Assembly: GCA_038496445.1 (NCBI GenBank)
Contig: JALMLS010000479.1
Location: 124,001 to 188,000 of the forward strand
Length of the DNA stretch: 64,000 nucleotides
From: Trichosphaerium sp. ATCC 40318
Taxonomy: Eukaryota > Protista > Tubulinea
Direction: 5' to 3'
Position 1 is the stretch's first letter. Each line of letters starts with the position of its first letter. A model generated the notes under the pieces. That model was not told where the DNA came from and ran no database searches. It saw only the letters and a list, made by a program, of their open reading frames with translations. Below, piece by piece: positions 166-43,245 of this stretch. Made by a program: the position numbers and the translations under genes.

Positions 166-2139
166 GAAATTTTAAACTACAGACGAAACGGAGTTCCTTT
201 TTGGAACAGGTTGTCCATTTGGGGCGTATGCGCTGACTTGAAGCATCCAACTGAGATAAGTCACTACTTGGCTTGTATGAAAGATGTCACTATCAAAAGA
301 CAGTCTGTAACTATACCTAAACAATGGACATGTGAAGAAGTCGCCATGTGGGCTGGTACACGATACTTGAGACAAACGAGAATCCGAAAAAAAAAGCCTT
401 TAGTTGTCTCTTTTTTTTTTGGTGTTCAGCTATTGTCGTTGACAAACTCTTTCATAGACCGGCATGATTTTCACCACTATTCAAAAAACTTCATAGATCA
501 AAATATAGATGGCGCTGAGCTTTGCAGAATGGGTAATTGATCAATTAAAAACACTTAATTTTTTTTTTGAACATAGAAAAAAATCAAAAACATCTTGTAT
601 TTTACCGCCAAGTCTTAAAAAACGTTTTAGGTATTCCTGAGATACGTAAAAAAATAGGAATGGATAAACTCTCAGCAAAGGACTTACATATGAGCTTAAG
701 GAGGAAAAAGAAACGTGCGGTTAAATTCATTTTTTCAAAAAATCAAAAAAATCAAGTGACAATCTTTTCCCTCATTTCTCTTCTAGGAAAGGCATCATTA
801 CCTTCTACAATGCAACGTATGTTATTATTTGAGGGTTGAAACGGGTTTTTAAAACAAATTTATGTTTGATCAAATGGAGATTGTCACGTGATTCAAAATT
901 TTGTTTTAACCCATTTTTAGAGCGTTTCATTGTGAAGGTTGAATACGGAAAGGATGCAACCATGACAATATTATTTGCATTGGATACAAAGGAAGCACTA
1001 CTCAAACGGTTCGTTTTTTTTAATTTTTTTCGGGATCTAAATATAAAAATAAATAAAAATAAAACCTCTTTTTTTATCAAATCGTCTTCTTATTGCCCTA
1101 GGATACGCGCATCATGGCCAAAACAGATAAAAGCGAGACAAGTCGTTTTATTAGCAGTTGGACCTAACAAAGTGCCTATGGCTATAAATACAACGACAGA
1201 TATCAAGGGAGTAGTGTAAGCTTCATTTTCTTTTTTTTTTTTTGTAAACGAAAAATTTTTCGGTTTTTTTTTTGTGTTGATGCTCGTGAACTGTTATCTC
1301 TTTGAAAACCGCTCACGTGATTATTTAGAGATGAAATTAGAGCAGGAAAGGAATATCACTTTGTATTGACTACAAGCATAATGAAACAGGCTCTCGAGTT
1401 AGGGAAGGACTGTAAGATTGCTATAGCGGTTATTAACTCTAAAAACAAAATAACTTTTGTGAACAAAACGCTGTGCAAATTTTCCGGGTACGTCCGTTCA
1501 TCTCCTTAATTTTTTTTTTGCGCAACAATCAATGTGTACCGAAAAATTCGGAAGACACAACTTTTGACAAATAAAATCTCCTTCACTGGCATGTGTGTTA
1601 TAACCACTCACATTGATATTATCTATCTTTAGGTATGATGAATGTGACTTGATAGGCAAGCATTTTAATATTCTCTCCGACTCCACGTTATCAAAAAATA
1701 TGGAAGAATCAAGTGCGTTTCTCCCTTTTTTTTTGAAATCTTCAGAGACTGCAATGTCTGAAAAAACCTGTCTGCTCTGTGTCCTCTTTTTCCTGTTTTT
1801 TATTCGGTATTACAGAAGAAGAAATTGGTCTCAAAACTGCAAGCGGAGATACGTTACCTAATGTTATAGCAACAACGTCATGGATACCAAGAAGAGAAAT
1901 ATATCTTTGGACAGCAACAATGGCCGAAAAGGCTTCCATCCTCCTAGGGACTTTACACCGGCCTCAAAAACTTAAAACAAATAATGGTAGGCATCCCTGG
2001 AGAAGCTTCTCGATCGTGGGTAGTTCGAGAAGAGGTACGCACGTGACATTTTATATTTTATGACGATATTAATTGTATCTTTGTAGGAGGACAAAAACGA
2101 ACATCAAAAACGAAACAAAAAGCTGTGCAAACTAATTGA
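166..2139 (+). CDS. LOV/PAC-SAM-(PB1-like)-PAS multidomain signalling protein, 5'-truncated by window edge
   Basis: Exon from 166 reads EILNYRRNGVPFWNRLSIWGV...ISHYLACMKDVT (PAC half of a LOV-type PAS). Then SAM (WTCEEVAMW..FHHYSKNFIDQNIDGAELCRM), a PB1-like VKVEYGKD segment and a second PAS (ITFVNKTLCKFSG|YDECDLIGKHFNIL). Multiple GT-AG introns; 3' end approximate. Confidence 0.7.
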
Positions 2140-2862
2140 GACAAATGTCAATCCGCCTGTTGAACTGGAAACGAAGAAAAAAATATCAATATTTCGGAGA
2201 GGATTCGAGTTATTCAAAGCAATAGCACTAGAGATCAAGATAAGGGGGTTTTCTCAAAGTGCAGATTGAGAAGGCTTTATTTTTGGTTTGTTTAGTTTTA
2301 AATTGCTGTTTTTTTAAAAAATGAATCACATACCCACTGTCTACAGTGCTCATTGATAATGCCTATAAACAACGAGAGAACTACCCCAATATGTAATTTT
2401 GATTACCACCGTGTGGAGGATTTCCGATCTTATGACGTTACGTTGAAGAAAACATTGAGGCGAAACCTGCGAAGAAAAAAGAAAAAATATCACATTGGTT
2501 ATAACCATACTTTTTTATGTTACCTCCGATAACATTGACGCCTTTTTGGTTATATTGATCGATTTTCGTTCTTCTTGGTTGGCTTGATATTTTTGTGTAC
2601 TACTTCTTATTCTTATTTTGCCGTGTGTTGACGTTGACTACTTTTGTATGATAATAAAAAACTTGTATACTAAAAAAGAAGCCACCTTTCTTTTAGGTTT
2701 TTTTTTTTGTTGACGTTTCAGCTAGTTTCACGTGAATTTTTTTTTTAGATGACATTCCCCTCTTTATACAAAAAAGATAGGTTGAGGCTATGAAATGGAA
2801 GGGAATAAAAAAATTGTGTCGCAGTTTTATTTTTATTGATATTCTTACAATTTTTGTTTAGC

Positions 2863-3790
2863 CCCTAAGAAGTTTATGAAACATAGATACAGACGCCTAA
2901 CAGAGCATGCCCGATATATAACGCAAGTCCTGGCCCGAAACATATTCAGTTATGGTGATCTACTAAACCGACAATGCTCCGAAAAATGGTTTTATATAGA
3001 GCAAGGAAGGGTCAATTAAGCAACATATGATTTCCAAATAACAGCACTCACCTAAAAAAAGTCATTGTGATTTTTTTCATGAAGTTAGGTCTCTGAAGGT
3101 ATTATACAGACGCTTGTATCGATAGACGTCATCTTTGTTCTTGAAATAGTATTTTTTATTATTCGGCAAGGAAGACTGCGCAGTGACTCTGACTTAGTCT
3201 GTTTTACTGTGCAGTTTTTCGCCAAGGAGAAACCGTATTTGTGACACGTACATTGTCTTGATTTATTCATACAAACACAGCAACACCTCTTCCTAATACA
3301 ATAGAGACATGTCAATTCTTATCACTAGAAACCATCGTAAAGGACTATCTATTCATCAGCTTCTATGTACACCTATTAATCGTTCAACAAAGACAAAACA
3401 GCGGGCAATTGTACAAAAGAAACGTAAGATGAAGACAGCAATGAAACAATATGGTATGTTACTTGTAAACTATCTTTTTTCTTTTATTTTATGCTTTTTT
3501 TATTTTTTATATCGTTTTTCTCTCAAACCATCACGTGATTGGCCTTCTTTCATCATAGATTAGCTAACATAACTTTAGTAATGCGTTTCAGAGCGAAGGG
3601 TCCCATTGAGGAACAGAACGATAGCGATGCCCGACGACTACAAACCCTAAAGTCTTTACAACCAAAAGGCCCATTTCAACTCGATTTTGTGAGCCTAACA
3701 CGAAACTACAGCCCGTATTATTATAAACGCGAACAATACTGCAAAGAAACTTTCATAGTTTTAGAATTTGGGCCTGCGTCAGGCCCTTAA
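2863..3790 (+). CDS. hypothetical spliced gene, model uncertain
   Basis: Exon-like ORF pieces (3309-3454, ~3590-3790) separated by T-rich GT..AG intervals; no recognisable domain. Confidence 0.25.
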
Positions 3791-4676
3791 GACACTTGTA
3801 GTTAACACTAAAAACCCAAAACTGTACAATAAAAGAAGATTTTTGTAATACTAAATCTCATATTTTTTAACTTTAAAAAAAATCAGCTCTCCTACATCTC
3901 CATTGTCATAAAATATTTTTGTTTTGTTTTAGGACAAATAGCCAACGGTTTTTTTTTATATTCAAAATAAACCGCAACTTTAATACGATGACATGATGTG
4001 ATTTTGAGTGAGTGATTAGTTGTTTGTTGCGGAGTAAAGGACATGCATTTTTAGATGATTTTTCAAATTTCTGAAAAAGAGTAAAGAAAGCGACTTTTTA
4101 GGCGCCTATTTTAACCTAACGGTTTTTTATGTGTAAATCAAAATAATAGTATGTTATAAGTCAGATAAAACCGGTTTGAAAAGAAAACAATCACGTGATA
4201 ATAACCCAAAAAAATCTCCGCGTTTTACACCTCCAGCACTGCTCACTGCCGCTAAAAGTAGCGCTAGTAACGTCGAGCAAAATGAAAGAGAACTAGCGCA
4301 ACTTTTCTGAAAAAGGTATACGAATGTAAAGAACAACACAATTGCGCTATGACCCGCAGAAAAGTGCGTAGGTTTAAGTTTTCGTAAACAGATGATCTGA
4401 ACTGCAAAAAAGACTAGGGTTCTTTTGTGACATGTCCTATTGAAATGCACCAACAAATTTCGTATTGAAACCATTTAACTATTTCTTAGTGTGATTTCAT
4501 TGCGTGATTTAGCTTCAACTTTGTTCTTCAACACCACATGGTGACCAATAACCAACAAGCAGTTAGAACGAGTTGTGAAAACTAAGAACAAAACGTCTGT
4601 TGACCTAACCAACACTCTTTTACAACAGAACTATATTCAATCTTTGTAGCATTACTGCACATTATGAGCGGTGCGC

Positions 4677-7497: not shown

Positions 7498-9647
7498 TTA
7501 TGATGGATTTTTATACGCTGGCACTGCTACAACTACAATCGAAATGATTATAGTAGTCATAACCAAGAGCCATGTTATGTAGCTATTCACTATACAATAG
7601 ACTATCAGAGAAAACAACCTACTCAGAAGAAAAACGATGATTATTACCTATTGCCATCCAAGATCCTAAATCACGTGATCCAAGTTTCCAGTGTGGCACA
7701 GCCACGAATAGAGGGCGATCTAATTACAAGTTTGTTGAAAGCAAAGAGTTTGTAGGAGGGTACCTATTTCATCACCTAAGCTTCCATCTTGCTCAGCCTG
7801 TCTAACCATTTTCCTGGCGATCATGTAAAGTATAAACGGGATTACAAAATTAATCCAGCCATTCACAATCAAGCTTTAAAACACTTGTTAACGTTGGGTG
7901 AAACAAGAATTTAATGTGGGATTGTTTGTTGTACCTTGTCCAGTTTAACACATCACCTAATCCGTTTCCTGTACAAAAAGGAATAGACACAAGCCACGGG
8001 AATATGACTCCCCAAAAATTAGCCCATGCTACAACGCTTTAGGTTAAACTAGTCTTGTAACAACTGAAGCATACCTTTTCCGCATACGTTGTTTTCAATG
8101 AGATTATATCTCACAATGATAGAAAATACAGGTATCCCTGAAAGGAGTACAACAATTGGGAAGAAATAAACGCAAATCTTGGCTATTATGTGCAATGCAC
8201 CATGTGGACTAAAACCCCATGTGTTAGTCTATTAAACGATATAAAACTATCATACAAAGCAGCGTTTGTAACGCTTAGAATATCATCATTTCCTGAGTAA
8301 GTGAATGCCCACCCACCTAATGACATTGTTACAAATTCAAAGTTGAGACCAAGCAAGTACCCATGAATCCCTACTTATTATAAGAAAGAAATAAGAAAAC
8401 TTTGGCAAGAAGAAAAGACGTCTTACTAGTATCAAGAACATTATGGTTGATACAACATTCGACCACCATACGGACTTGTTCACAGATACTTTTTCTTCTT
8501 TTTCATTTGCCCATGAAGGAACTGAGACAACAAAGGCGCTTACGAACAATAGGTGAGTATGGTAAATGACAACAAAGGCAGTGAATGAATGGCATACTAG
8601 TTGAATATGATATTACCCAATACTTGCGTTTGATTTTTACCATATACTGGAACCCTTTCAAAATGTACACCATCTCGGTGAAATATTATACCAAAATTAA
8701 CTAGCCACTCAAGCATTATGACAATCAAGAACAAAAAAGCACCTTAAAAAACAAACAAGTTGTTAAACAAAGCACGTGTACATTAACTAGCATACCAACT
8801 TGTACATAAATGTTGTCATCCAAGTTGAAGTATCCCATTGGAATAGTCGCAACTACACGTGGCTTATGTTAAAAAAAGAACTCGCAGAAGATCGTACTGA
8901 GGACTATAACGAAGCCAATGGAAAGAACATAAGATCCGTTCGGAAATGGAGAATCAGAAGTGGGTGTGCCAGAAACGTGAGCCCATCCTGGATGTGGGTA
9001 AGCTTCTAGAGCGCCAGTGTAGTTAAACACCTCAAGGAGAGCGTAATCCATAGTCTGAAACATATTTAGGAAGAAATATTGTAACCACAAACGTACTTGA
9101 GCAGATTCTATTATGGACGCTATGTTTATCGCTTGCAGAGCGACAACAAATAGAACAAACGTTAACCAAAAAGCCCAACGAGGAAATAACTTCTTTGCGA
9201 GGGTACACAGCTCGATACGCCCCTGAAAGTGTCGCCACAACGTTAAAATCGCTTGCTTTTGCTATGAACGTGCCTGAAACCTGTCATTGCCAGGTATACA
9301 AGCCATGGTCTCACAAAGCGCTGTTGACGCGAGAGAGCTTATGTACATAAACAACAACATCAGGAAAGTAGGTATGAGCCACCCAGACTGTTGAAAAACA
9401 ACAGGAATAGTCACCATTGCTAAAACGTGTCATTTATATTGTCACGTGTTCGTAAACGGTTTTTTTTACCAGGGCCTGTTATATTATTTACCAGGAGAGC
9501 GAAACCGCCAAAGAAAGAAATTTTCTTTTCTCCAAAGCTGCCATTAGGCTCTGCGTTTGATTTCCCGGTATGTATAAGCTCATCGTTTATGCCAAAATGT
9601 TCTGTAAGACTTTTCTCTTGTGCCTTCCCTTTACAGCAAGACAACAT
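7498..9647 (-). CDS. amino acid transporter (Aa_trans/AAAP family)
   Basis: KKISFFGGFALLVNNITGPG|MVTIPVVFQQSGW, IPGNDRFQ|GRIE, FVSAFVVSVPSWANEK; many TM segments over multiple exons. Confidence 0.85.
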
Positions 9648-9835
9648 GTTGCTGCCTAATCAAAAAAAAAAGCGAATGACATTTCTGGACGAAATCGAAC
9701 ATTTGCCGAAAACCAATGTCTTTCACAATATCACCTGAAATAGAAATGTTGCCTCTTGAACAAATTAACAAACAACAGGCATACTTCTAGTATTCAAAGA
9801 CGTTTAAGCTTTATTAAGATTACAAGAACAATAGT

Positions 9836-11782
9836 CTAACTAGTAGTCGCCTTGAGAACATCAGGGTTAGTGAGTGATCTCATTTCAAGAACGTCCTCTG
9901 AGGTTGTATGAGGCTGTGTAGTTTTGCGACTTCGCTTGTACAATAATAAAATTGCAAGTGCGACAACAGCAACAATTACGATACCTATTATACCAAACAG
10001 GACAACCCACCACCGCTGTTCTGTATCTGTACGCTTCTTCTCATCACTGATCTTATTTGGAAACACCTCACAGGATGTCCAATCAAACCCATACAATGTC
10101 TTTGTAGCTCCCTATAAATTCATGTTAAGCCATCCTCAACCCGCTTCGTTAGTAATATCGTACACGGATAGTATCAGAAGTAAACTTGACTTGACATATA
10201 TCTCTGGCTATCCACTGAGCGCTCCTCTCTACAATGATTGTAAGAGCATTAAAAAAACACGTGTTTCACTGCACCTCGAAGAGTTCCCTGAGTGACAATG
10301 CCTTCAATCTCTATATAAGCACGCCTCTTTACAGACATTGTAGGAAACCTCAATTGAAGGCGGTTCGATGCAACACCGATCTAGATGGGTGGTTAGCACC
10401 AATACAATTTTGCAGCACGTGCTTGGCTAGTAAGATAATCCACAAATTTATTTTCGACTGTAGCTTCAATATCACTTGGAAAGGGCTTCTCCAGGCTGAT
10501 CAAAAATTTTATGATAGTTTGAACGCCACACTGCCTCGTGCTCTTGGAGAGGGTGACTTGGCTTGATCCAAGATGCCATGTGTATGGCAGAGCATTCGTG
10601 GACATCTCTTCTAGTTCCAAAAAAGCGTGTCTACCAGGATGGATGATGTCACCAATACTAAAAGTAGCTGATTGAACCTCTTGCAGATGACAACTTTTTT
10701 TGCCAGCATAATTGTAGCCCAAAAATGCCTTTAAAACGGTTACAAACCAATTAAAAACACGAAACTTACTCTTGTTACTGATTGGCTACCAGCATCTTCA
10801 ATACACTCCACAATTGGTGTCAAAGATTGTGTGTCACATGCAGGAAGTACCTAGGGTGTGAATTAGAAAATATACATGTAAGTGGACTCATACAAATCCA
10901 TGTGGTGCTTGATCAACAGGCTGGCAATCCACTTTAAACTTTAACTTACTAAATCTAATCAACTTGTGCTTTGACAATTTCTAACTTACTTGTCTTCTCT
11001 GCTAACACAAGTCGAATCATCTTTTGTATTCGCGTATTCTACAGTGCAAATACGCAATCCACCGCTTCCTGAAATTTCTGGATGACCACTGTCATCCTCT
11101 GTGTCCAGATTGTAAGAAAAAAACCAGATAACAATGACCACTTACCAAAAACCAAACTGAGTGTTGCGTTCTCATAGGATAATAGCTCCGTTGTTGTGCC
11201 AATTTCAGGTGAATGACACATACCGTGTCGAATATACCCAGTGGCTGTTACGTTGGTATTAAGCAAGTGTTGACCTTGATTCAGCAATGAGATATTGCTG
11301 TAACTCATGCTGAAGCAATAATATCTTAATGCATCACTGCTAGTTGCATCGTATCCGAGCACTATCTTAACAGTGCCACCTATCTTGACCGTATTAGAGT
11401 TCGGGTCATAACTTAGCGCAACGCTCGCGCTGTCAGCTTCGAAATCGAATGCTACACTTCCTCCTGTCGCTGGGAATTGGGAGTAATCGTGTAGAAACAG
11501 ACCTATTTCAGTTTGTTTAGTTTTTTCGCGATTTAATGCCCGAAACTACAAACAAACGCACCATATTCTATTTCACCGCTTGTGTCACTTATATCGATGG
11601 CTCCATCGTTTAATAGTCCAAACGACACTGTTTTTGAAGTATTTTCGAGTATTGAGCGTGTACACGCAACCTCAGCGCGTATTAAACCACCTAAGCGTTA
11701 TTTTGTAAATAATTATTGCAAAAAACAGTTAACACTTACTCAAAACACAGAAAACTACAAAAACTACTGTAGAATGGTGCAT
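9836..11782 (-). CDS. type I single-pass membrane protein
   Basis: Signal-like N-terminus (MHHSTVVFVVFCVL), Cys/N-glycosylation-rich ectodomain, C-terminal TM WWVVLFGIIGIVIVAVVALAILLLY followed by KRSRK stop-transfer. Confidence 0.65.
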
Positions 11783-13202
11783 TTGTATTGTTGATTACGC
11801 TTTTATTGCGTTTAAAATATACACAAACTGGTTTTAGACAGTCAAAAACTTGCTATTTTTTAATTGGCTTCTTTGGGTGCAAAATTCTATTTGCGACTAG
11901 ATTCATTGTTTGGTTTTAACCTTGATATATTTAACGCACTAATGGTAAGTGTGAGGAAAACAATCAGGTGAATACCAACAAAATTGCAATTGTTCATTTG
12001 CCAACTGCTATTTTGAGGTCTATGTGTCAGTGTTGGTTCTAAACTCAGCGCACCATGCGATGATCCAACAAACAAAGAATTTCCTTTCTGCAACCTTGAG
12101 TTATCGTTCAGGGATCGCGTAAAAGATCTTGTCTCGAGGTACGCCATGCTCACGCTGCGACAACTTTTCATCAAACGCATAACATTGCACTCTTTGCACA
12201 CGCTGCTTCTGGAGTTCAAAGTCTTAAGATTCCATCGTATCAATGGTGGAATGAAGCTTTACATGGTGTAGCACGTGAGTGAGGAGAATTTTAGTATTTA
12301 TTTACTATTGATGTGCGCCCAAGTACCGACCACGTTGTTAGGATAATACAAAGAATTCCAAAGTCTCCGAGTGCTAGATGCAGAATGCCAGCAAATACTT
12401 GCGCATAGCCAAAATGCCAGCATGTGAAAAGTACAAGTATTTCAGATAGGAGCAACTTACAGCCTTGTTCAGTAGAGACATTTATATCAATACTGAAGTA
12501 TTGACAATATGAATACACCGCAAGCAGTGACTTTATGCAATGATTACAAATCCCTCGGCATGCTCGTGGACAATCTCGCAGGTTCAGGAAGCGCGTGAGC
12601 TCTACGTTGTAACCTCTAAACCTATGCTTCAGACGATTATTGTGGCGTCATCTTTGCTTCCGGTTATCATTTTTGTTGCGTTCTTAGTTCAACTGATACG
12701 TACATCGGAGAAACTTTAATCAACGAACGTGGTGCGAACGCTAACGCACTGCTTCGTTTCAAAATGGTTCGACGAAACGTGAAAAACGTAAAAGCACGTT
12801 TGCAAAGGTATCTAACGAGGTTTGAGTATAAGTAACAGCGTCATGATATAGCCATTTGTACTTTTTTTCCAATACTCCCCAACTATTGACTCACACCTCT
12901 CCTTGTAAGTTCGCGAACATTTTGATGAACAAGGATTAATACTGGCTGGTATTATTAGTACTTTGATTGCAAATACAATTGGAACTAGCGCTACCCTTCA
13001 ATAATCGATTAAAACATGCCAACATAACATGACGCTAGCAATGATTTCATAAAAACGTGGAGTAATACATGCCAAAAGGCGTAAAAGGAAAGAGAATTAA
13101 AAAAAAGGGGTTGACCGGTTTTTTGATGTCGAGCCTTGCACGTCAAAAAAAATGAAATTTCTTGTGTTACAAACCTTCAGAGTGCCACTACACCTTCGCA
13201 GT

Positions 13203-14516
13203 ATGACAGCTTCTCCTAAAAACGCAAAGAAATCGCTGATTCAGCTTAAAAAGAGGATTGATAACGCCAAAGAACCGTTTTGTACAGTAGATAATTGCGA
13301 AGCGCAGGATGCCCACTTCCTACGTTTCCTGAGACAGAAATCATACGATTACAAGGCAGCTTACAAAAAATTGGAGCGATACCACAAGTGGGTAGACAGT
13401 GGTGTATTAGATAAGCTCACAGTGGAGGAGCTAGAGCCACAGCTAAAAACACAAAAGCTCCAGTTGATGGGAAAAGATTTGGAGGTATTCCTCTTTTTTT
13501 TTTGTGAATAGACGCTAAACGACCACTGGTCAGGTCGTTTGGCGTTGTTTTTAATATTTCTTAACAACGTTTTCACTTTTTCGCCTTTCGCTCTAAATTT
13601 ATTTGTTTTGTCACTAAACCTCTCTAGGGTAGACCAATCTTACTTATTCGCTCCGCTTTACATCTCCCAGGGGAGTTTTCAACAGAGTCCACAATGCTCC
13701 TTATGGTAGCAACCATTTTTACAATGATAGCTCAAATGGACGATGACGTAGAACAAGCGCTGATCGTATGGGATTTGAAAGGGTAAGCAAACTTTTTTAT
13801 ACCCAGTGTCACATGACATTGTTACGAGTTAGCTTTTTTTTTGTTTTTCCACACTTTGATCCAGAAAAATTACTCCGTTATTCTTCTCCGACTCATGTAT
13901 TTTCTAAGATGGTCTCTAAAGAACCGTGACCCTGATCTTGTGAAGGCTGGTTCAGAACTCATTTCACAATATTTTCCACAACGTATTTACAAGGTTCTTA
14001 TTGTTAATGCACCGTTTATTGTTTGTGGTTTGTGGCGAGGTATGTAGAAAGTTGTTTTGTTAACAAAATAAAAAACAAAAAAAAAATCACAAAAAACATT
14101 TCGGAAAAATATTTATTGACACTTTCCATCTTTAGCGCTCAAACCTATGCTCCCGACTAGATACACATGTTTAGTATCTTTTCTTGCAAAACCAAAGGAG
14201 ATAAGAAAATACGTAGCTGAAAAAGAGTGCCCAAAACAATACGGTACGAATTCGTCCCAAACAGAAAAGATCTTCTTTTTTGAATTATTTTTCCTTTTCT
14301 GACTTATTCTTCTCAGGCGGTAAACTCGTTCTTGATGAGACTGACTGGATGAACGCAACGATCAAAGCAGTGACGAGCCACAAGGAGCCAATGCCACACT
14401 TGTACAATTTTTGCAAATTTTTTAAAGGTGACACTGTTTCTCCAGAAGAACTTGAAAAGCTTGATAATCTCGCTGACGAACCATCAAAAGTATTTGACGC
14501 TGTTTTTGACGAATAA
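13203..14516 (+). CDS. CRAL-TRIO / Sec14-like lipid-binding protein
   Basis: DAHFLRFLRQKSYD, GKDLE|GRPILLIR, IVWDLKG|WSLKN, YFPQRIYKVLIVNAP, PKQYG|GKL. Confidence 0.9.
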
Positions 14517-14993
14517 CTCTGGCCAAACCAGTATAACATTGTATTATAACCAACTCACAATCCTGACACCCTTCAACAATTGCGAAAAAGTGGATGAGCG
14601 AGCAAATGATTTCAAAAAGGGGTAAAACTTTTTGTACAGCCTCATATTGCGTACCTCACACACGTCACACTCAAAAAAAGAGCGTCCAGTGTGATCACAG
14701 TCGCTTGTCGTAGAAGAATAAAATGTACTTTAGCTTGCACTCAATTTGTACATGTTTATCTGAGCTCTCTTTGTACTTTTTGGAACTATCTCTCTTTTTT
14801 TTAGCCGATCGAAACTTCAACGGCTAAAGGCGTTAAACGTCCTACTCCAACTACCTCGTTAGGTGTTTGTTTTCTCCTTATGTTAATATTAGTCAATCAC
14901 GTTATGTTTTCAATCAGCGGCGATCCATCAAAAGTTACCGTAACACTTTTTGGTGAACGCACCTCTTGACAGTTTTCGTTATCATCATAAGCC

Positions 14994-17900
14994 ATGACCA
15001 CAACAGATGGTTCAGTACAGTCTCGTTTGGCGCAAGAGCACTTTACTTTTGTCAAAACGTTGAAACAACACCCAAACGGGTTTACGATGCGAGAACTCCA
15101 AGAGAACCTCGGTATTAAAATAACAGAGCCGCTGCTTGAACTATTAAAAGCAAACACCCAATTGGAGTATGATGAAAATACAGGTCATATCAAATACAAG
15201 CACAAGTACCGCATTGGTTGTAGCGACGATATAATGCAAATTTTGAAGCGAGAAAGGATAATGCAAGTGGACGAAGAAACAACTACGGCGTACCCGCAAA
15301 TCAAATCTATCTTATACGTAAGTTTGGTTTTTGCTGTCTGGCTGTTACGATAATGACGACTTTTCAGCGACTTTTCACCACTTTCTCTGGGAAATTTTTG
15401 GATGGTTTTTCCAACCTTTTTTTTCTTTTCACGTGTTGCATGTTATAATTAACGTGTTGTAGAATCTTCGCAATGAGCTTAAAGTACTCAACGTCGAGCA
15501 CAGTGTCAATAAGAATTTGGTACGAGCGACAAAGCGGTAATTGCAGTAAACTAACTAAACCTGATTAGATGGTATACTTGAGACCCTCTTTGAATCACGT
15601 AAACCCACCTATTGACCTTGAGACTCTACCAAAGAAAATACAAAGGCTATGGAATAACGTAGCCAAGGTAGATTTCGTAGACCTGAAACAGATATTATTG
15701 TACGCCAAGCAACAATGTGTTTTGCGTTTTGAGGTAACATAGCAACTAGAGACAACGACCGTCCGCTTTCAAAACTGGACTGCAATGTGCAACCAGATAT
15801 GTTTCAGGATGGAAAACAGAGGCGAAAGAAAGAGAAGCGCGATCAATCTGATGCCGACGCTGACTTGCAAGCGCTTGCAGCTATTCTTCGGTAGGTTGTT
15901 TCTACTTTTTAAACTAAGCAATCTTCAGAGGGGGACTTCAAAGCCAAGGTGGTGAAGAGTATGTTTTTAAGTTCGATACAGCATTCGATTTCTTGCCATC
16001 TTCAAAGGAGGAATCTGGAAAAAAGCTAAAGCGGGCCATACTGCACAATGGCGAAGCGAATCCAACTGAATTTGAAAAAATAGTGGATCTGATTGCAATC
16101 GTTGCCACGTGGTTTTATAGTCACGATAGCTTTGTCTTAACCCTTTACAAGTTTGTAGAGAAGAAATTGTACGCATACAATATTGTCAAACACGTGACTG
16201 CGTTGTTGGTATCATGTATTGACAAGATCTAATGTTATCTAATAGATTCTTCGAAAAAGATTTATGCACTGAATTACAGCTGCCAGCAAAGCAAGTCAAC
16301 AAAGCTTTATCTATCCTCGGTGGCCATAAGCTGATAACGAGGTAATTTAATATATTGAACTATTATGCAAACTTAATCTGTAAATAGACACGTGGTAGAA
16401 CCCAAAAAGAGGTCTTCTAGCAAGTATGCTAGGATGACTAATGTATGGACAATTGACTTGGACAAATTTGTGGATGCTGTACATTATCGTGTCCTTACTA
16501 TGGAGAAAGACCTCGTAGATGAAATTGAAAAGATGAAAGACGAAGTGCTTGTTTGTAGGCCATGTAAAAAAACATACAAGACGCTGCAAGTTGAAAGTGT
16601 CAAAAACAGAGCAACTGGAAAGTACCATTGTGATGTGATTGGATGCGATATTGAGTTGACCAGAACTAACAATCGCGCCTTGCTTCAAGAAAAAGAGTCA
16701 TTGCTAAAGGAGCTAAGAAGGGTAATGCAACCCCTCAAGGATAGAATAGATGACTTACTAAACCTCGATAAAAGAGGTAAGTACTAGATAACTGTTTCGA
16801 AACAAAAACTGAAAACGCCTTTAGGTAGGAATCCTAACCATAGATGCAACTTTCGCAAATCTGTGTCAACCTCCACACGCCGAGAAACTCGCTCAAGAAG
16901 ACGACGTTTGATTAAAAAGCCACCTGTAAAGCCTACCGGATCAACAAATAATCCTGAAAGCAAGGAGGAGGTATTTGTGCTTTTTGCCTTGGTTTAGGGT
17001 TGACATTTGTTTAGCCGAAAGCTGACATCGTTGAGTACTTTCAATGCCACCCTTTGCAGTATAGAGCAGTACAACCATTAATGACAGAGATATTGTTGCC
17101 TATAGTAAAACAACCACATGTCCTAAAACGTGAACATGGATTTGTGTTGGCTAAAGAGTTGCTTGACAACATAGCTCAATTCAAAAAAATCATAGAAGCA
17201 CGCTTCTACTTATACGAAATAACACCATTGTCCCTCTTTCTTGCGTACTCAAGAGGTATCACGATAATACACTCCAGCTGCCAGCTTCGTGTTCTTATTT
17301 TTTCTAGGATACAATGCCAAGGAGATTGTCAGATTAATAACTGAGCTGGGACAAAATGTAATACCAGATGACTTGCATAGACTTATAAGGAATTATACTT
17401 CAAATGCATACTACAAGATTGTACTTGTGTTGAGGTACGACTATCTAGTTTCGTTGCTACATATGCTTATTGTTTTGATTCAATAGGAACAACAAGTACT
17501 TCGTACAAACACCAAACGAAGACTTGTGTGATGCAGTAAAGGGTATAAAAGAGCTGAATGACTACTGTGCAAATTCAGTTATTTGTAAATATTATGGACC
17601 TGGTAACTGTTTTGATAAAAACCTAGTGTTCTTACCTTTGTGTACTTAGACAAGAAGGTGTGTTTCGGTTTCGAAATCGAACCTGAGCAGGCAGAGAATG
17701 TCAAGCGTATCTGTTATAAACATGGGTTTCCTATAATCGAAGAATTTCAAGTGGGTAGCTATACAGAGGCATCATCTATAAGGTAGCAAAACTAATCACT
17801 TACAACAACTCTAAACTTAATAAATATTTAGGATCAATATTCGTCCTGAGATCAAGTTGCGAGATTACCAACTCCACAGCAGCCACAGTCTTTTTTGGAA

Positions 17901-19565
17901 TGGTTACAAGATGCACTCAGGCATACTTGTGTTACCCTGTGGCGCTGGAAAGACACTGGTTGGTATCAACGCTGTTGCTATGTGCAAGGTACTCATCGAT
18001 GTTTGACAAAGTTTCTTACATGTATTTGTGTTTAGCTGAATGCAATTGTATTCTGTCAGTCTGCTCTTGCAGTAACACAGTGGAAAGAACAATTTAAGAA
18101 GTTCACCGATGTGCAAGACAAACAAATATCTCGGTTCGTATCCCTTCATAGGAGAGAGTGGAACGCGAAGTACGGTCATTACAAAAGCCATAAAAGTAAT
18201 CCAGATTAGTGCCGACATCGTTGTGACAACATACAGCATGTTCTCTTCTGAAAAAGGAAGGAAGCAAGATTCTCTTAGCACCATGAGGCAGTGTAAAGAT
18301 AGGGTATGGGGTATCATGATATTAGATGAAGTGCATCTCGCAACAGCAACAGTTTTTAGGCATGTTTTTTTTAATGTCAATTTGTGTATTGACTTACACG
18401 TACACCTATAGAAAAGTTACCAATCAAATTAAGAGTCACGTGAAAGTCGGATTAACCGCAACAATGGTTCGTGAGGACAATCTGATCCCTGAATTACCAT
18501 ACCTTGTTGGTCCAACGCTCTATGAGCTCGATATCTTCACGCTTCAGTACGACTTACCAGTTGTTATTATACTACTAACACGAACCTCCTTAGAATGCGT
18601 GGTCACATCGCGCCCGTACGTTGCCATGAGATTCACGTGCCAATGGCACAGAAATTCAAAGAAAGACATCAAATGTACTATCTATCTCTTTGGTTTTTAC
18701 TTACACTACGCTATTGCTCACTAAATCTACCTAGCTCTGATTATATGGAAGAACGACGATTGTTGTACATGTGTAATCCAAACAAGACACGCATTCTGTA
18801 TGAGCTAGTAATGAAGCATGCTATGGCAGGAAGCAAAGTCATCATTTTCTGTGATTCCATCTTCAGTTTGACATGGTATTCTCATCTCCTCAGTACGCTA
18901 ACCTCGAAAACAAACTCTCCACACTTGCTTCATAGCACTAACAACCATCGAAATATAGACTGGGACATGGTCCATGGAGATACAGCCCTAGCAGATCGTG
19001 CACATGTGTTGTCCAAGTTTAGAAGAGAAGGTCACAATAGCATCAACCGTATCCTCCTCAGTTCAGTAGGAGATCAGTCTATCGATCTCCCAAGTGCCGA
19101 CGTTGTTATTCAGCTTGGTTGTGGAGATGGGTCACGCATGCAAGAAGGACAACGGATAGGACGTGTTCAAAGACCTTACAAAAACAAAACAGAAGCTCAC
19201 TTTTACTCCCTTGTATCATCGGATACAGAGGAAGTCAAATACGCTGCCAAGCGTCGAAGCTTCTTGGAAGATCATGGATATGTTGTTAACGTTCAAGCGA
19301 ATGGTTCTTCGTACTTTACAGCTCGCACCAAGCAATACGTTGAGCTCAGGCATCAAGAGACGCTGACTGACGCCATTCGAAAGGAGCTTACTAGACGAAG
19401 AAAAGAGAAGGATAAGGTACCAAACCTCGGATCACAAGTCAGACGATCAGTCGCTCACCATTTTCCTAGCCTAAATCCCGCAATAACTTTCATAATGTAC
19501 GTGCAAAACGTAAGCAGACCACGCCCAGACAAGGCATGTTAAAGAAACTGAAAATGAGAAAATAA
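14994..19565 (+). CDS. putative TFIIE-beta / TFIIE-alpha / XPB(ERCC3-like) triple fusion protein, ~1,170 aa, 20 exons
   Basis: TFIIE-beta-like tandem winged helices (LLELLKANTQLEYD..HIKYKHKYRI; IQRLWNNV; basic tail). TFIIE-alpha-like WH plus Zn ribbon (KDLCTELQLPAKQVNKAL; WTIDLDKFVDAVHYRV; CRPC..CDVIGC). XPB NTD and helicase motifs (LRDYQ, LPCGAGKT, DEVH, GLTATMVRED, NPNK, SRMQEGQRIGRVQR). Intron phases checked by hand across both domain junctions. Confidence 0.75.
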
Positions 19566-19746
19566 CAACCGAGAAGTAACATAAATCTTGGCTGATTAAC
19601 TTCAGACCAACACCTAGTAATACCACCTCGTGTCCTACAATAAACACTCATTTTTAAGCGCACAACATTATTTGACACCTCACAGCCTCATTTGGTTTTT
19701 TTTTCTCTACAAGCTTGAGAGCTAAGCGAAACGAACAAGTATAGTG

Positions 19747-41811: not shown

Positions 41812-42680
41812 TTAGTTGGACAAGTGAACGCCAGACTTCAAGTAGTAAATCTCGTCCTTCTTGTTGACGCCCCATACGTGTCCTTGGCATCCAATATCAA
41901 TCTGCTTAAGACCACCTGAGATTTTAGACCATGATCCTTTGCCAAGAGGTTTCCAGTAGATGTCGCTGTCCTTTTGAACACCGAAAAAGCCGTGGTTGGA
42001 AGCGGACATGTGGCTAAAGCTCTTGTCGAGTTTCTTCCAGGATGTACCGGTTGGTTTGTCCGCTGTCACACCCTCACGAATGTACAAATCATCGTTCTTG
42101 TTGGTACCAATGACGCTGTTGTTGTGCATTACAGTCAAGTTTTTGAGAAGACCGTCGATCTACAACCAGAGCGAGTTAGGTTTTTGGAATTTATCAAAAA
42201 ACTTCTGAAGCTTTTTCAACGTACCTTTTGCCACTTGCCTTGAAGGCCGTTGCGGTAGTAAATCTCGTCTTTGGCGTTACAACCCCAAACGCGACCGTCT
42301 GCTCCTACAGAGACGTATTTCAAACCGCCATCAACCTTTTGCCAGCCATGACCAAGTGGGTTCTCAGTCTGGAATACACGTGTCAAATCAAAATGTAAAG
42401 TTTTCGAGACTGTTTTGGTAAAAGCGAAATAAAACAAACGAAGGCGAAGGCGTACGCTAGCACCGTTGCGGAAGTAAATCTCGTCTTTGGCGTTACAGCC
42501 CCAAACGTGCCCATTAGCGCCGACGCTAACTTGCTTCAATAGACCATCGACTTTCGTCCATCCAGCAGCGTTTAGCTCAGGGCGGTGGTATATTTCGTCT
42601 TTTGTATTGACTCCCCAGGTGGTACCGTTAGGGCCAACAGAAATATGAACAAGGAGACCGTCTACTTTTTGCCAGGACAT
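41812..42680 (-). CDS. tectonin (beta-propeller lectin, ~6 repeats)
   Basis: Tandem W-KVDG-LK-VSVG--G-VWG-NAKDEIY-R repeats; 3 exons. Confidence 0.9.
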
Positions 42681-43245
42681 GTTGTTGCGTTTGTTGTGGA
42701 TGAAAGTGTTTGAACCGTTTTTTTTTGGTTTACACAACTTTTGTGCGTCGGTTAAAATGTGTAAAACGTCGTTCCACTGTGCTCTGGTATCGTCACAGAG
42801 AATTCAGCATGGATTGATAGTGACAAGTCAAAATAAAGACTAAAGACCGAACTTGATATGGAGCTACCTTAGTTTGGCCTTTATTGGCCTACACGTGCTA
42901 GAAAAACGTTTGGAAAAAAATGTTGAACTTTTGTGCAGTTTCTCTGGAACGCGTCGCATTGTTTTTGGATTCAGCCACTTGCGTGTTAAATACGTTTTCT
43001 GCAATACCCAAACAAGTTTGGGTAATCGGGTTAAGTTTTGTGTTACACACTTTCCTTTTGTATTCGTTATGCATACCTGATTAATTTGAGTGCCCTGACA
43101 GGTTGTTATTATTGTTTTTTAAAACTGTGTCACAGGGTGCATTGTAACAAACCTCTTGTTGTAACATCAATAAACATATCCAAACAAAAACACTGGGCAA
43201 GGTGTCATAAATTAATGCCAATAAACATTTATTGAAATTGATTCA

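What the first reader, a model, noticed from the sequence alone, without database searches (positions are those of the whole stretch)
14994..19565. Single gene fusing TFIIE-beta, TFIIE-alpha and an XPB translocase: candidate one-chain promoter-opening factor
Seen: one frame can be spliced across 19 introns. The beta/alpha junction uses intron 15891-15928 (GT..ctaag..cag, phase 2), and the alpha part has no in-frame ATG of its own before its winged helix. The alpha/XPB junction uses introns 16777-16824 and 16971-17014, flanking an open 49-codon basic linker. Established: TFIIE is normally a heterodimer from two genes that recruits TFIIH and stimulates XPB/Ssl2 to open Pol II promoters; XPB is a separate TFIIH subunit. 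Inference: this organism covalently links the three, possibly as a specialised or partly TFIIH-independent initiation module. I know of no described protein with this architecture, but could not search.
Basis: partly seen in the sequence, partly recalled or inferred. Interest (0 to 1): 0.95.

Follow-up and report, generated by a model that had tools for sequence, protein, structure and literature searches.

The report
One-gene TFIIE-beta/alpha–XPB fusion protein
This intron-rich gene joins both subunits of the transcription factor TFIIE to a copy of the DNA motor XPB in one 1169-residue protein. The same undescribed fusion is found in several amoebae, so it is an old, conserved design rather than an annotation accident.

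Summary
A 19-intron model (CDS 14994..19565, + strand) gives one stop-free 1169-aa protein. It has TFIIE-beta (two winged helices and a basic tail), TFIIE-alpha (winged helix, linker helix, 4-Cys zinc ribbon), a basic low-complexity tether, then a complete XPB translocase with all ATPase motifs.

No RNA run was listed for this genome, so the splices were not seen directly. The fused order is nevertheless shared by at least seven lineages less than 50% identical to each other:
- Trinity transcripts of three named amoebae (Vermamoeba, Rhizamoeba, Nolandella).
- Two genomic contigs in which both junctions lie inside one uninterrupted exon.

Profiles built from these relatives alone hit the window model at 3e-34 (beta), 2e-54 (alpha) and 1e-189 (helicase). 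The relatives also corrected two of my introns.

The fused helicases form their own strongly supported clade. It lies apart from the clade holding labelled canonical XPBs, which suggests a specialised paralogue.

Five full-text searches found no description of this architecture. It sits unremarked in databases as "uncharacterized" or "ERCC-3".

A role as a self-contained, possibly TFIIH-independent promoter opener is inferred, not shown.

The parts
14994..19565 (+). Whole coding region of the fusion gene: 20 exons, 19 introns, 1169 aa, about 136 kDa, pI 9.4. Introns: 15318-15462, 15520-15568, 15700-15749, 15891-15928, 16169-16245, 16342-16387, 16777-16824, 16971-17014, 17256-17307, 17435-17486, 17603-17649, 17783-17831, 17989-18035, 18170-18209, 18360-18411, 18547-18593, 18675-18734, 18893-18958, 19417-19469.
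   Evidence: Model built and translated. It is collinear with relatives.
14994..15890 (+). TFIIE-beta module (exons 1-4, aa 1-218): winged helix 1, winged helix 2, the conserved PLSKLDCN motif (15763-15786) and a basic C-terminal helix region.
   Evidence: Pfam TFIIE_beta 2.3e-8 on exon 1. Family beta profile 3e-34 over aa 15-215. Family profile against yeast Tfa2 residues 130-312, 6.8e-15.
15318..15462 (+). Intron 1 (145 nt, phase 0), at a position shared with two relatives.
   Evidence: Same aligned position and phase in L001 (307-467) and L004 (9633-9904).
15891..15928 (+). Beta/alpha junction intron: 38 nt, GTAGGT...ACTAAG...CAG, phase 2. If retained, the frame stops at TAG 15892.
   Evidence: The spliced join ...AAILRG/GLQ... 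aligns without a gap to relatives. A homology-checked 40-nt intron in the same gene shows that such short introns occur.
15929..16776 (+). TFIIE-alpha module (exons 5-7, aa 218-460). It holds a short linker, the conserved HNGEANP motif (16044-16064), the extended winged helix, a linker helix, the zinc ribbon (CRPC 16554-16565, HCDVIGC 16626-16646) and a following helix. There is no acidic C-terminal domain.
   Evidence: Family alpha profile 2e-54 over aa 258-450. Family profile against human GTF2E1 residues 14-192, 7.8e-25. The four cysteines are invariant in the family. No in-frame ATG lies before the winged helix.
16777..16824 (+). First alpha/XPB junction intron: 48 nt, GTAAGT...TAG, in frame, holds TAG 16785.
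   Evidence: It lies in a non-conserved linker, so it is predicted only from splice signals and the frame.
16825..16970 (+). Tether exon (aa 460-508): basic and Ser/Thr/Pro-rich, with RSRRRR at 16890-16907 (possible nuclear localisation or DNA-contact patch).
   Evidence: The frame is open with no ATG. Relatives have a low-complexity tether of 70-275 aa at this place, several with a basic patch. The AF2 model of an ortholog is disordered here.
16971..17014 (+). Second alpha/XPB junction intron: 44 nt, GTATTT...TAG, shifts the frame from 0 to 2.
17015..19565 (+). XPB module (exons 9-20, aa 509-1169). It holds the conserved entry motif FQCHPLQY (17039-17062), the N-terminal and damage-recognition-type domains, both RecA lobes and a basic tail ending at the stop 19563-19565. 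Motifs: GAGKT 17941-17955, DEVH 18325-18336, GLTAT 18449-18463, VRED 18467-18478, GSRMQEGQRIGR 19129-19164.
   Evidence: Pfam ResIII and ERCC3_RAD25_C. PDB XPB chains 1e-22. Family profiles 5e-44 and 1.4e-189. Motif table. The ortholog model superposes on human and yeast XPB at TM 0.87.
18360..18411 (+). GC-AG intron (52 nt), the only non-GT donor in the gene.
   Evidence: Only this splice keeps the conserved ...VFR/KVTN... join seen in all relatives.
19639..19644 (+). AATAAA, the only canonical poly(A)-signal hexamer found in the three stretches scanned: the two junction regions and the 3' end. It lies 74 nt after the stop.
   Evidence: There is none at the beta/alpha junction, and only the weak variants ATTAAA (16911) and AATAAT (16947) inside the tether exon.

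Best explanation
The region 14994-19565 is one gene. Its mRNA, after removal of 19 short introns, encodes a single 1169-aa chain. In order, the chain holds TFIIE-beta without its N-terminal tail, TFIIE-alpha residues about 1-190 without its acidic TFIIH-binding tail, a flexible basic tether, and a complete, catalytically competent XPB-type dsDNA translocase. It belongs to an old family that has kept this order in several amoebozoan lineages.

Inferred mechanism:
- The two TFIIE parts fold back on each other like the normal heterodimer and dock on the polymerase clamp/stalk and upstream promoter DNA.
- The tether (70-275 residues in the family) lets the XPB motor reach downstream DNA and pump it toward the active site to open the promoter.
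- Recruitment of XPB, normally achieved by the TFIIE-alpha tail binding TFIIH p62, is replaced by a covalent link.

Because the fused helicases form a clade of their own, the protein is most likely a specialised paralogue working beside the ordinary TFIIE and TFIIH. Whether it still joins a TFIIH core is open.

Shown: architecture, family membership, conservation, intact motifs. Inferred: splicing in this organism, the intramolecular TFIIE fold-back, the polymerase served, and independence from TFIIH.
For: Gene model:
- One stop-free ORF across 19 introns. 18 of 19 donors start GTA, and 18 acceptors are TAG and one CAG.

Domains:
- Pfam TFIIE_beta, ResIII and ERCC3_RAD25_C on window exons.
- Profiles built from relatives without the window hit the model at 3e-34, 2e-54, 5e-44 and 1.4e-189.
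- Family profiles (alignments that include one window exon each) hit solved TFIIE-beta (6.8e-15) and TFIIE-alpha (7.8e-25). This is far better than archaeal TFE (1.8e-5) or Pol III RPC3 (0.2).
- AF2 models of an ortholog match TFIIE-alpha, TFIIE-beta and XPB chains.

Fusion is real in relatives:
- Trinity transcripts of Vermamoeba vermiformis (1213 aa), Nolandella sp. (1169 aa) and Rhizamoeba saxonica (996 aa).
- In the Vermamoeba and Nolandella transcripts, Pfam finds TFIIE-beta winged-helix and XPB domains in one ORF. TFIIE_alpha is also hit in Vermamoeba. In Nolandella the alpha part is seen by the family alpha profile, of whose alignment it is a member (6e-69).
- L001 and L004 carry both junctions in one uninterrupted exon.
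- P0153 is a continuous ORF on 9 contigs, seen in at least five samples.
- Intron 1 position and phase are shared by three lineages.

Against separate genes:
- No start codon for alpha. Conserved coding sequence lies upstream of the only possible XPB start. No poly(A) hexamer at the first junction.
- Neighbouring genes are 270-475 nt away, whereas a three-gene reading would leave no spacer at the first junction and about 290 nt of open, ATG-less frame before the only possible XPB start at the second.

Activity:
- All helicase motifs and the four zinc-ribbon cysteines are conserved.

Paralogue:
- The fused helicases form one clade (SH-aLRT 100, stem 0.57), apart from the clade with Tritrichomonas, Vitrella and Intoshia XPB.
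Against: - No transcript evidence from this organism: no RNA run was listed.
- The two introns of the alpha/XPB junction lie in a non-conserved tether. They rest only on splice signals and the frame.
- The 38-nt junction intron is the shortest in the gene and the only one with a CAG acceptor.
- Both junction introns carry an early in-frame stop, so retention would give shorter products.
- I could not check whether this genome, or any relative, also has canonical TFIIE and XPB.
- The separate clade could be a long-branch effect. The tree is midpoint-rooted and only a few rows carry names.
- No inter-domain contacts could be read from the AF2 model (pTM 0.61). The TFIIE fold-back and the reach of the tether are therefore inferences from published PIC structures.
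Confidence: 0.8

Rival explanations
1. Three adjacent, separately expressed genes (TFIIE-beta-like, TFIIE-alpha-like, XPB-like) have been wrongly joined by taking short intergenic spacers for introns.
For: Unspliced, the beta frame ends at TAG 15892, close to where canonical TFIIE-beta ends. The alpha frame ends at TAG 16785. An ATG at 17081 could start an XPB lacking only its N-terminal extension.
Against: - The alpha part has no in-frame ATG.
- Sequence upstream of ATG 17081 encodes a family-conserved motif.
- The first junction would leave no room for a promoter or a 3' end, and the stretch before ATG 17081 is an open frame without an ATG. True neighbours sit 270-475 nt away.
- Relatives carry both junctions inside single exons and single transcripts.
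Confidence: 0.04
2. The fusion gene is real, but regulated retention of the junction introns also yields shorter products: beta alone (stop at 15892) and beta-alpha (stop at 16785). The locus would then supply both a TFIIE-like factor and the tethered motor.
For: Both junction introns place a stop within the first three codons after the donor. The first junction intron is unusually short and has the only CAG acceptor. The beta stop would fall near the natural beta C-terminus.
Against: Nearly any retained intron brings a stop, so this is not special. In L001 and L004 there is no intron at either junction, so the family does not depend on such a switch. There are no RNA data.
Confidence: 0.12
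3. The fused protein is not a specialised paralogue. It is these organisms' only TFIIE and XPB: the general factors themselves, fused, and still assembling with the TFIIH core.
For: The XPB part keeps the whole canonical fold, including the N-terminal domain that binds p52 in TFIIH. The ortholog model superposes at TM 0.87 over about 610 residues. No canonical copy was seen here, but none could be searched for.
Against: - The fused helicases are only 33-37% identical to canonical XPBs. They sit on a long stem outside a clade that spans parabasalid, alveolate and animal XPBs.
- They carry clade-specific changes in motif VI.
- From my own knowledge, not tested here: other Amoebozoa such as Dictyostelium have an ordinary XPB (repB) and ordinary TFIIE genes.
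Confidence: 0.15
4. The protein works outside transcription initiation. For example, it could be a DNA-repair or chromatin translocase that uses TFIIE-type winged helices only as DNA-binding or dimerisation modules.
For: From my own knowledge, XPB paralogues with repair-only roles exist (trypanosomatid XPB-R), and archaeal XPB works with the nuclease Bax1 outside any TFIIH (PDB hits). Winged helices are generic DNA binders.
Against: Both TFIIE subunits are kept together, in order, with the polymerase-docking zinc ribbon invariant. They match TFIIE far better than any other winged-helix family. That is hard to explain without a polymerase partner.
Confidence: 0.1

Closest known systems
TFIIE heterodimer (TFIIE-alpha/GTF2E1/Tfa1 with TFIIE-beta/GTF2E2/Tfa2)
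   Same: The beta part has WH1, WH2 and the basic C-terminal helices (aligns to Tfa2 130-312). The alpha part has the extended winged helix, linker helix and 4-Cys zinc ribbon (aligns to human GTF2E1 14-192). The folds match chains W and X of PIC structures.
   Different: The two subunits are one chain, in the order beta then alpha. The beta N-terminal Ser-rich tail and the whole alpha C-terminal half are absent, including the acidic p62-binding domain (Pfam TFIIE-A_C). A tether to XPB stands in their place.
XPB / Ssl2 / ERCC3, translocase subunit of TFIIH
   Same: The full domain set is present (Helicase_C_3 N-terminal region, ResIII, ERCC3_RAD25_C). Walker A and B, the RED motif and motif VI are kept. 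The ortholog model superposes on human and yeast XPB at rmsd about 3 A.
   Different: About 510 residues of TFIIE are fused in front and the N-terminal extension is missing. It forms a separate clade at 33-37% identity to canonical XPBs, with its own motif VI variant (GSRMQEGQRIGRVQRP against GSRRQEAQRLGRILRP). Membership of a TFIIH complex is unknown.
Lineage-specific XPB paralogues (trypanosomatid XPB-R, Arabidopsis XPB1/XPB2); recalled from my own knowledge, not tested here
   Same: A second XPB-type gene with a presumably specialised role.
   Different: Those paralogues carry no TFIIE domains.
RNA polymerase III subcomplex RPC82/RPC34/RPC31 and Pol I A49: TFIIE-like modules permanently attached to a polymerase
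   Same: Both illustrate the same evolutionary trend, turning a transient TFIIE-type interaction into a permanent one.
   Different: There the TFIIE-like parts are bound to the polymerase, not to a motor. The family profile matches RPC3 only at E = 0.2, against 1e-24 for TFIIE-alpha.
Archaeal TFE-alpha/beta and archaeal XPB-Bax1
   Same: They share the same ancestral parts. Archaeal XPB shows that an XPB motor can act without a TFIIH core.
   Different: The matches are weaker (TFE 1.8e-5, archaeal XPB about 20% identity). The parts are separate genes, not fused.

Membership tests
TFIIE-beta (GTF2E2/Tfa2) | First winged helix (Pfam PF02186 TFIIE_beta core domain) | tested here: met
   Window exon 1: 34.6 bits, E 2.3e-8, above the 28.1 cut-off.
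TFIIE-beta (GTF2E2/Tfa2) | Second winged helix (PF18121 TFA2_Winged_2) and basic C-terminal helices | tested here: met
   The domain is split by introns in the window, so it was tested through the family. Nolandella ortholog: 28.4 bits, above the cut-off of 26. The beta profile built without the window hits the model at 3e-34 over aa 15-215. The family profile aligns to yeast Tfa2 130-312 at 6.8e-15.
TFIIE-alpha (GTF2E1/Tfa1) | Extended winged helix plus linker helix (PF02002 TFIIE_alpha) | tested here: met
   A window exon alone gives only 14.2 bits, because it holds part of the domain. Orthologs reach up to 47.7 bits. The model against the family alpha profile gives 2e-54. The family profile against human GTF2E1 14-192 gives 7.8e-25. 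Fold match is rmsd 2.9 A over 185 residues.
TFIIE-alpha (GTF2E1/Tfa1) | Four-cysteine zinc ribbon | tested here: met
   CRPC at 16554-16565 and C-x4-C at 16629-16646. The four Cys are invariant in 11 family members.
TFIIE-alpha (GTF2E1/Tfa1) | Acidic C-terminal domain that binds TFIIH p62 (PF11521 TFIIE-A_C) | tested here: not met
   No Pfam hit in any family member. After the helix that follows the ribbon comes a basic low-complexity tether. The protein is therefore a truncated TFIIE-alpha module, not a full-length member.
XPB / ERCC3 / Ssl2 | ERCC3_RAD25_C and ResIII helicase lobes with Walker A, Walker B, RED motif and motif VI | tested here: met
   Pfam 3.5e-36 and 4.7e-5 on window exons. 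Motifs at 17941-17955, 18325-18336, 18467-18478 and 19129-19164. PDB XPB chains 1e-22.
XPB / ERCC3 / Ssl2 | XPB-specific N-terminal domain (PF13625 Helicase_C_3 region) | tested here: met
   Orthologs score above the cut-off. The model against the family profile gives 5e-44 over aa 533-691. The ortholog model covers nearly the whole solved XPB chain at TM 0.87. Single window exons gave no Pfam hit.
XPB / ERCC3 / Ssl2 | Orthology with canonical eukaryotic XPB | tested here: not met
   The fused sequences form a separate clade (SH-aLRT 100), outside the clade that holds labelled XPBs of Tritrichomonas, Vitrella and Intoshia. Caveats: midpoint root, quick search, long stem.
TFIIH complex subunit | Assembly with p52, p8 and the TFIIH core | not testable with these tools
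   Needs co-purification, or complex prediction with the organism's own p52 and p8, which were not available.

The most novel reading that the evidence does not exclude
Amoebozoa carry a self-sufficient, single-chain promoter-opening machine. TFIIE and an XPB motor are covalently coupled and act on a polymerase without the TFIIH core, at all or a subset of promoters. This would be a natural demonstration that the XPB-TFIIE pair is the minimal DNA-opening unit of eukaryotic initiation.
Probability: 0.25. Interest if true: 0.9.

Novelty: new variant of a known kind. Interest (0 to 1): 0.74.

Why it matters
TFIIE and XPB are textbook separate factors. TFIIE recruits TFIIH and stimulates XPB, and how the two are coupled is still studied by cryo-EM and single-molecule work.

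A conserved natural fusion of both TFIIE subunits to an XPB motor has several consequences:
- It is a 'Rosetta stone' showing that this trio is the functional core of promoter opening.
- It offers a simple, single-polypeptide reagent for biochemistry and structure.
- It raises the testable question of whether XPB can work in initiation without the rest of TFIIH.
- It adds an unrecognised general-transcription-factor paralogue to Amoebozoa.
- It shows that database entries labelled 'ERCC-3' or 'uncharacterized protein', including one filed under a locust, hide this architecture.

Tried and rejected

Word-index searches (search for homologous proteins) with Vermamoeba residues 1-540, with P0013 residues 1-620, and with an 11-sequence alignment returned only near-identical proteins. 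They added nothing on distribution.

ESM Atlas searches by features and by shape found ordinary TFIIE-alpha clusters only, and no cluster with the fused architecture. Only clusters of 50 or more members are searched there, so this says little.

My first intron 3 (15734-15807) and intron 14 (18138-18204) were rejected after alignment to relatives. I had considered an alpha gene starting at ATG 15799. That ATG turned out to be an internal Met of the conserved beta tail.

I considered a giant-virus origin because P0012 sits in a dense intronless contig. The fused genes themselves have cellular neighbours: Med12, sortilin and cathepsin in one contig, PP4R3 and ASF1 in another. The window gene has 19 spliceosomal introns.

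Attempts to show canonical XPB in the same samples as fused genes gave different samples. Cluster look-ups of short top hits gave only unnamed metagenome fragments.

The bacterial promoter/terminator scan is irrelevant to a eukaryote and was ignored.


Full report
WHAT IS IN THE SEQUENCE

Between 14994 and 19565 on the + strand there is a run of short open segments in alternating frames, separated by 38-145 nt spacers. Eighteen spacers begin GTA and one begins GC. Eighteen end TAG and one ends CAG. Joining the segments gives one ORF with no stop.

- 15891-15928: 38 nt, GTAGGT...ACTAAG...CAG, phase 2.
- 16777-16824: 48 nt, in frame.
- 16971-17014: 44 nt.

The last two flank an open, basic exon, 16825-16970. 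Unspliced, the frame would stop at TAG 15892 and at TAG 16785.

There is no in-frame ATG for the alpha part. The only ATG that could start a separate XPB is at 17081.

WHAT THE PARTS ARE

Pfam on single exons gives:
- TFIIE_beta, 2.3e-8 (above the cut-off).
- A partial TFIIE_alpha match, 0.04.
- ResIII.
- ERCC3_RAD25_C, 3.5e-36.

The late exon 18959-19416 matches solved human and yeast XPB at about 1e-22.

RELATIVES

An exhaustive profile search with 18595-19416 returned 1470 proteins. The best hits are unusually long, 996-1341 aa, with the helicase at the C-terminal end.

Pfam finds TFIIE_alpha plus the XPB helicase domains in one chain in five of the eight tested. In one of these it also finds TFA2_Winged_2.

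Cluster look-ups name three of them as Trinity transcripts from EukProt:
- Vermamoeba vermiformis, 1213 aa.
- Rhizamoeba saxonica, 996 aa.
- Nolandella sp., 1169 aa.

All three are Amoebozoa, Tubulinea.

A fourth is RefSeq XP_049848955.1, 'uncharacterized protein' of the locust Schistocerca gregaria. It sits on a 342-kb contig with ordinary eukaryotic neighbours. I take that contig for a protist contaminant, which I did not test.

The Vermamoeba transcript has these domains in one ORF: TFIIE_beta (12-63), TFA2_Winged_2 (69-124), TFIIE_alpha (264-366), Helicase_C_3 (561-666), ResIII and ERCC3_RAD25_C.

THE FUSION IS NOT A GENE-CALLING ARTEFACT

Genomic contig L001 is 99% identical to the Vermamoeba transcript. 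It has one intron after the first winged helix (307-467). One uninterrupted exon then runs from 468 to 3806, through the rest of beta, alpha, the tether and XPB.

The transcript joins exon 1 to exon 2 exactly at that predicted splice.

Contig L004 comes from another organism, with Med12, sortilin and cathepsin as neighbours. It has the same layout: exon 9303-9632, intron 9633-9904, then an ORF to 13513.

That first intron lies at the same aligned position and phase as intron 1 of the window.

L002 carries a 1238-aa fused ORF without any intron. P0153 (1301 aa) is a continuous ORF on nine contigs, seen in at least five samples.

THE WINDOW GENE IS A MEMBER

BLASTP aligns my model to the Vermamoeba-type protein in a single 1126-column alignment that crosses both junctions.

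Profiles built only from the relatives hit the window model. Against my first model the scores were 6e-24, 7e-52 and 2e-41.

Alignment then showed that two of my introns were wrong. The old intron 3 hid a conserved PLSKLDCN motif, and the old intron 14 hid a conserved EWN motif.

With introns 15700-15749 and 18170-18209 the model is 1169 aa. It has no gap against relatives at any exon junction in the conserved regions. Its scores rise to 3e-34 (beta), 2e-54 (alpha), 5e-44 (XPB N-terminal region) and 1.4e-189 (helicase).

The corrected intron 14 is 40 nt. The 38-nt junction intron is therefore not out of range for this gene.

The basic C-terminal tail encoded after the last intron (...KKLKMRK) matches the tails of relatives.

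The sequence upstream of ATG 17081 encodes the family motif F-x-x-x-P-[ILV]-x-[FY], which argues against a separate XPB start.

True neighbours are well spaced. A Sec14-like gene ends near 14519 and a B-box gene starts at 19834. That is 475 and 270 nt away. A three-gene reading would leave no spacer at the first junction. At the second it would leave only an open, ATG-less frame before ATG 17081.

In the three stretches scanned (both junction regions and the 3' end), the only AATAAA is at 19639, after the final stop.

FAMILY-LEVEL HOMOLOGY AND FOLD

- The beta-part profile hits yeast Tfa2 at 6.8e-15, residues 130-312.
- The alpha-part profile hits human GTF2E1 at 7.8e-25, residues 14-192.
- The same alpha profile hits yeast Tfa1 at 1e-19, archaeal TFE at 1.8e-5 and Pol III RPC3 at only 0.2.

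AF2 of the full-length Nolandella ortholog gives pLDDT 85.6. There are two disordered stretches exactly at the two junction linkers.

Its XPB part superposes on human and yeast XPB at TM 0.87 and rmsd about 3 A over about 610 residues. A model of the N-terminal 470 residues matches TFIIE-alpha chains (8.6e-11, rmsd 2.9 A) and TFIIE-beta chains (1.9e-5) of PIC structures.

These models are of an ortholog, not of the window protein. The spliced window protein cannot be passed to the tools by reference.

WHAT IS KEPT AND WHAT IS LOST

Kept in all members and in the window:
- The four zinc-ribbon cysteines.
- Walker A, DEVH, GLTAT, VRED and motif VI.

Lost:
- The TFIIE-beta N-terminal tail.
- Everything in TFIIE-alpha beyond about residue 190, including the acidic p62-binding domain. 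No TFIIE-A_C hit appears anywhere.
- The XPB N-terminal extension.

In place of the alpha tail there is a low-complexity tether of 70-275 residues, 82 residues in the window, often with a basic patch.

PARALOGUE OR ORTHOLOGUE

In a tree of 101 helicase regions the fused proteins form one clade with SH-aLRT 100 and a stem of 0.57. The clade also holds two truncated isoforms and one unfused protein.

It lies apart from a 72-row clade that holds labelled XPBs of a parabasalid, an alveolate and an animal.

Identity to canonical XPBs is 33-37%. The clade has its own motif VI variant.

This points to a distinct, old paralogue. However, the tree is a quick search with a midpoint root. I also could not check whether canonical TFIIE and XPB exist in the same genomes.

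HOW IT PROBABLY WORKS (INFERENCE)

In solved PICs, TFIIE sits on the clamp and stalk over the upstream edge of the bubble. XPB sits on downstream DNA. TFIIE recruits TFIIH through its acidic tail and stimulates XPB (established knowledge; also the review PMC13024598).

In this protein the recruiting tail is replaced by a covalent tether long enough to span that distance. The simplest reading is that the TFIIE modules dock on a polymerase and hold their own XPB motor on downstream DNA.

The TFIIE parts resemble TFIIE much more than the Pol III or archaeal relatives do. I therefore expect Pol II to be the partner.

Whether the motor still needs p52, p8 and the TFIIH core is open.

NOVELTY

Five full-text searches found no paper that describes a TFIIE-XPB fusion. 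One review and one comparative paper were opened and do not mention it.

The proteins exist in public collections under uninformative names. The scan's own index holds one related note on this window (s1-397337), which agrees with my reading, and nothing on other DNA.

LIMITS

- There is no RNA from this organism.
- The two tether introns are predictions.
- The organism is unidentified. It is probably an amoebozoan, judged from the relatives of this gene. Another agent's note calls it a marine protist, which I did not test.
- Function is untested.

Noticed in passing
L003:3186-5435 (protein P0012, Logan SRR22746111): A 749-aa XPB-like protein nests inside the fused clade, sister to P0010 with support 99. 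It has no TFIIE part anywhere on its 7.3-kb contig. The contig is densely packed with intronless ORFs, one carrying a YqaJ-like viral recombinase domain. It may be a giant-virus capture of the helicase part, or a secondary loss of the TFIIE part.
   Followed up: partly
L001:4-306 against L001:468-3806: In the Vermamoeba-type gene, exon 1 is 37% G+C and the 3.3-kb second exon is 54-60% G+C. Intron and flanks are 34-39%. The Trinity transcript joins the two exons, so the contig is not chimeric. The sharp shift within one gene is unexplained.
   Followed up: partly
window 18360-18411: This is a GC-AG intron, the only non-GT donor among the 19 introns. It is required to keep a join that is conserved in all relatives.
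   Followed up: yes
protein P0007 = XP_049848955.1, GCA_023897955.2: A fused TFIIE-XPB protein is filed in RefSeq as an uncharacterized protein of the locust Schistocerca gregaria. It lies on a 342-kb contig whose genes have almost no introns (3814 nt for 1227 aa). This is probably a protist contaminant or symbiont in the insect assembly.
   Followed up: no
window 15892-15894 and 16785-16787: Both junction introns bring an in-frame TAG within three codons of the donor. Intron retention would therefore yield a beta-only or a beta-alpha-only protein. Whether this is used could not be tested.
   Followed up: no
window 13152-14519 (+) and 19834 onward (+): Neighbours on the same strand are a Sec14/CRAL-TRIO-like gene upstream and a B-box-type zinc-finger gene downstream. 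The spacers, 475 and 270 nt, show how compact this region is.
   Followed up: no
window 42216-42737 (-) and 59839-61479 (+): There is a tectonin-like repeat ORF and a leucine-rich-repeat plus Roc-GTPase (Roco-type) gene. Both kinds are common in Amoebozoa, which fits the relatives of the fusion gene.
   Followed up: no
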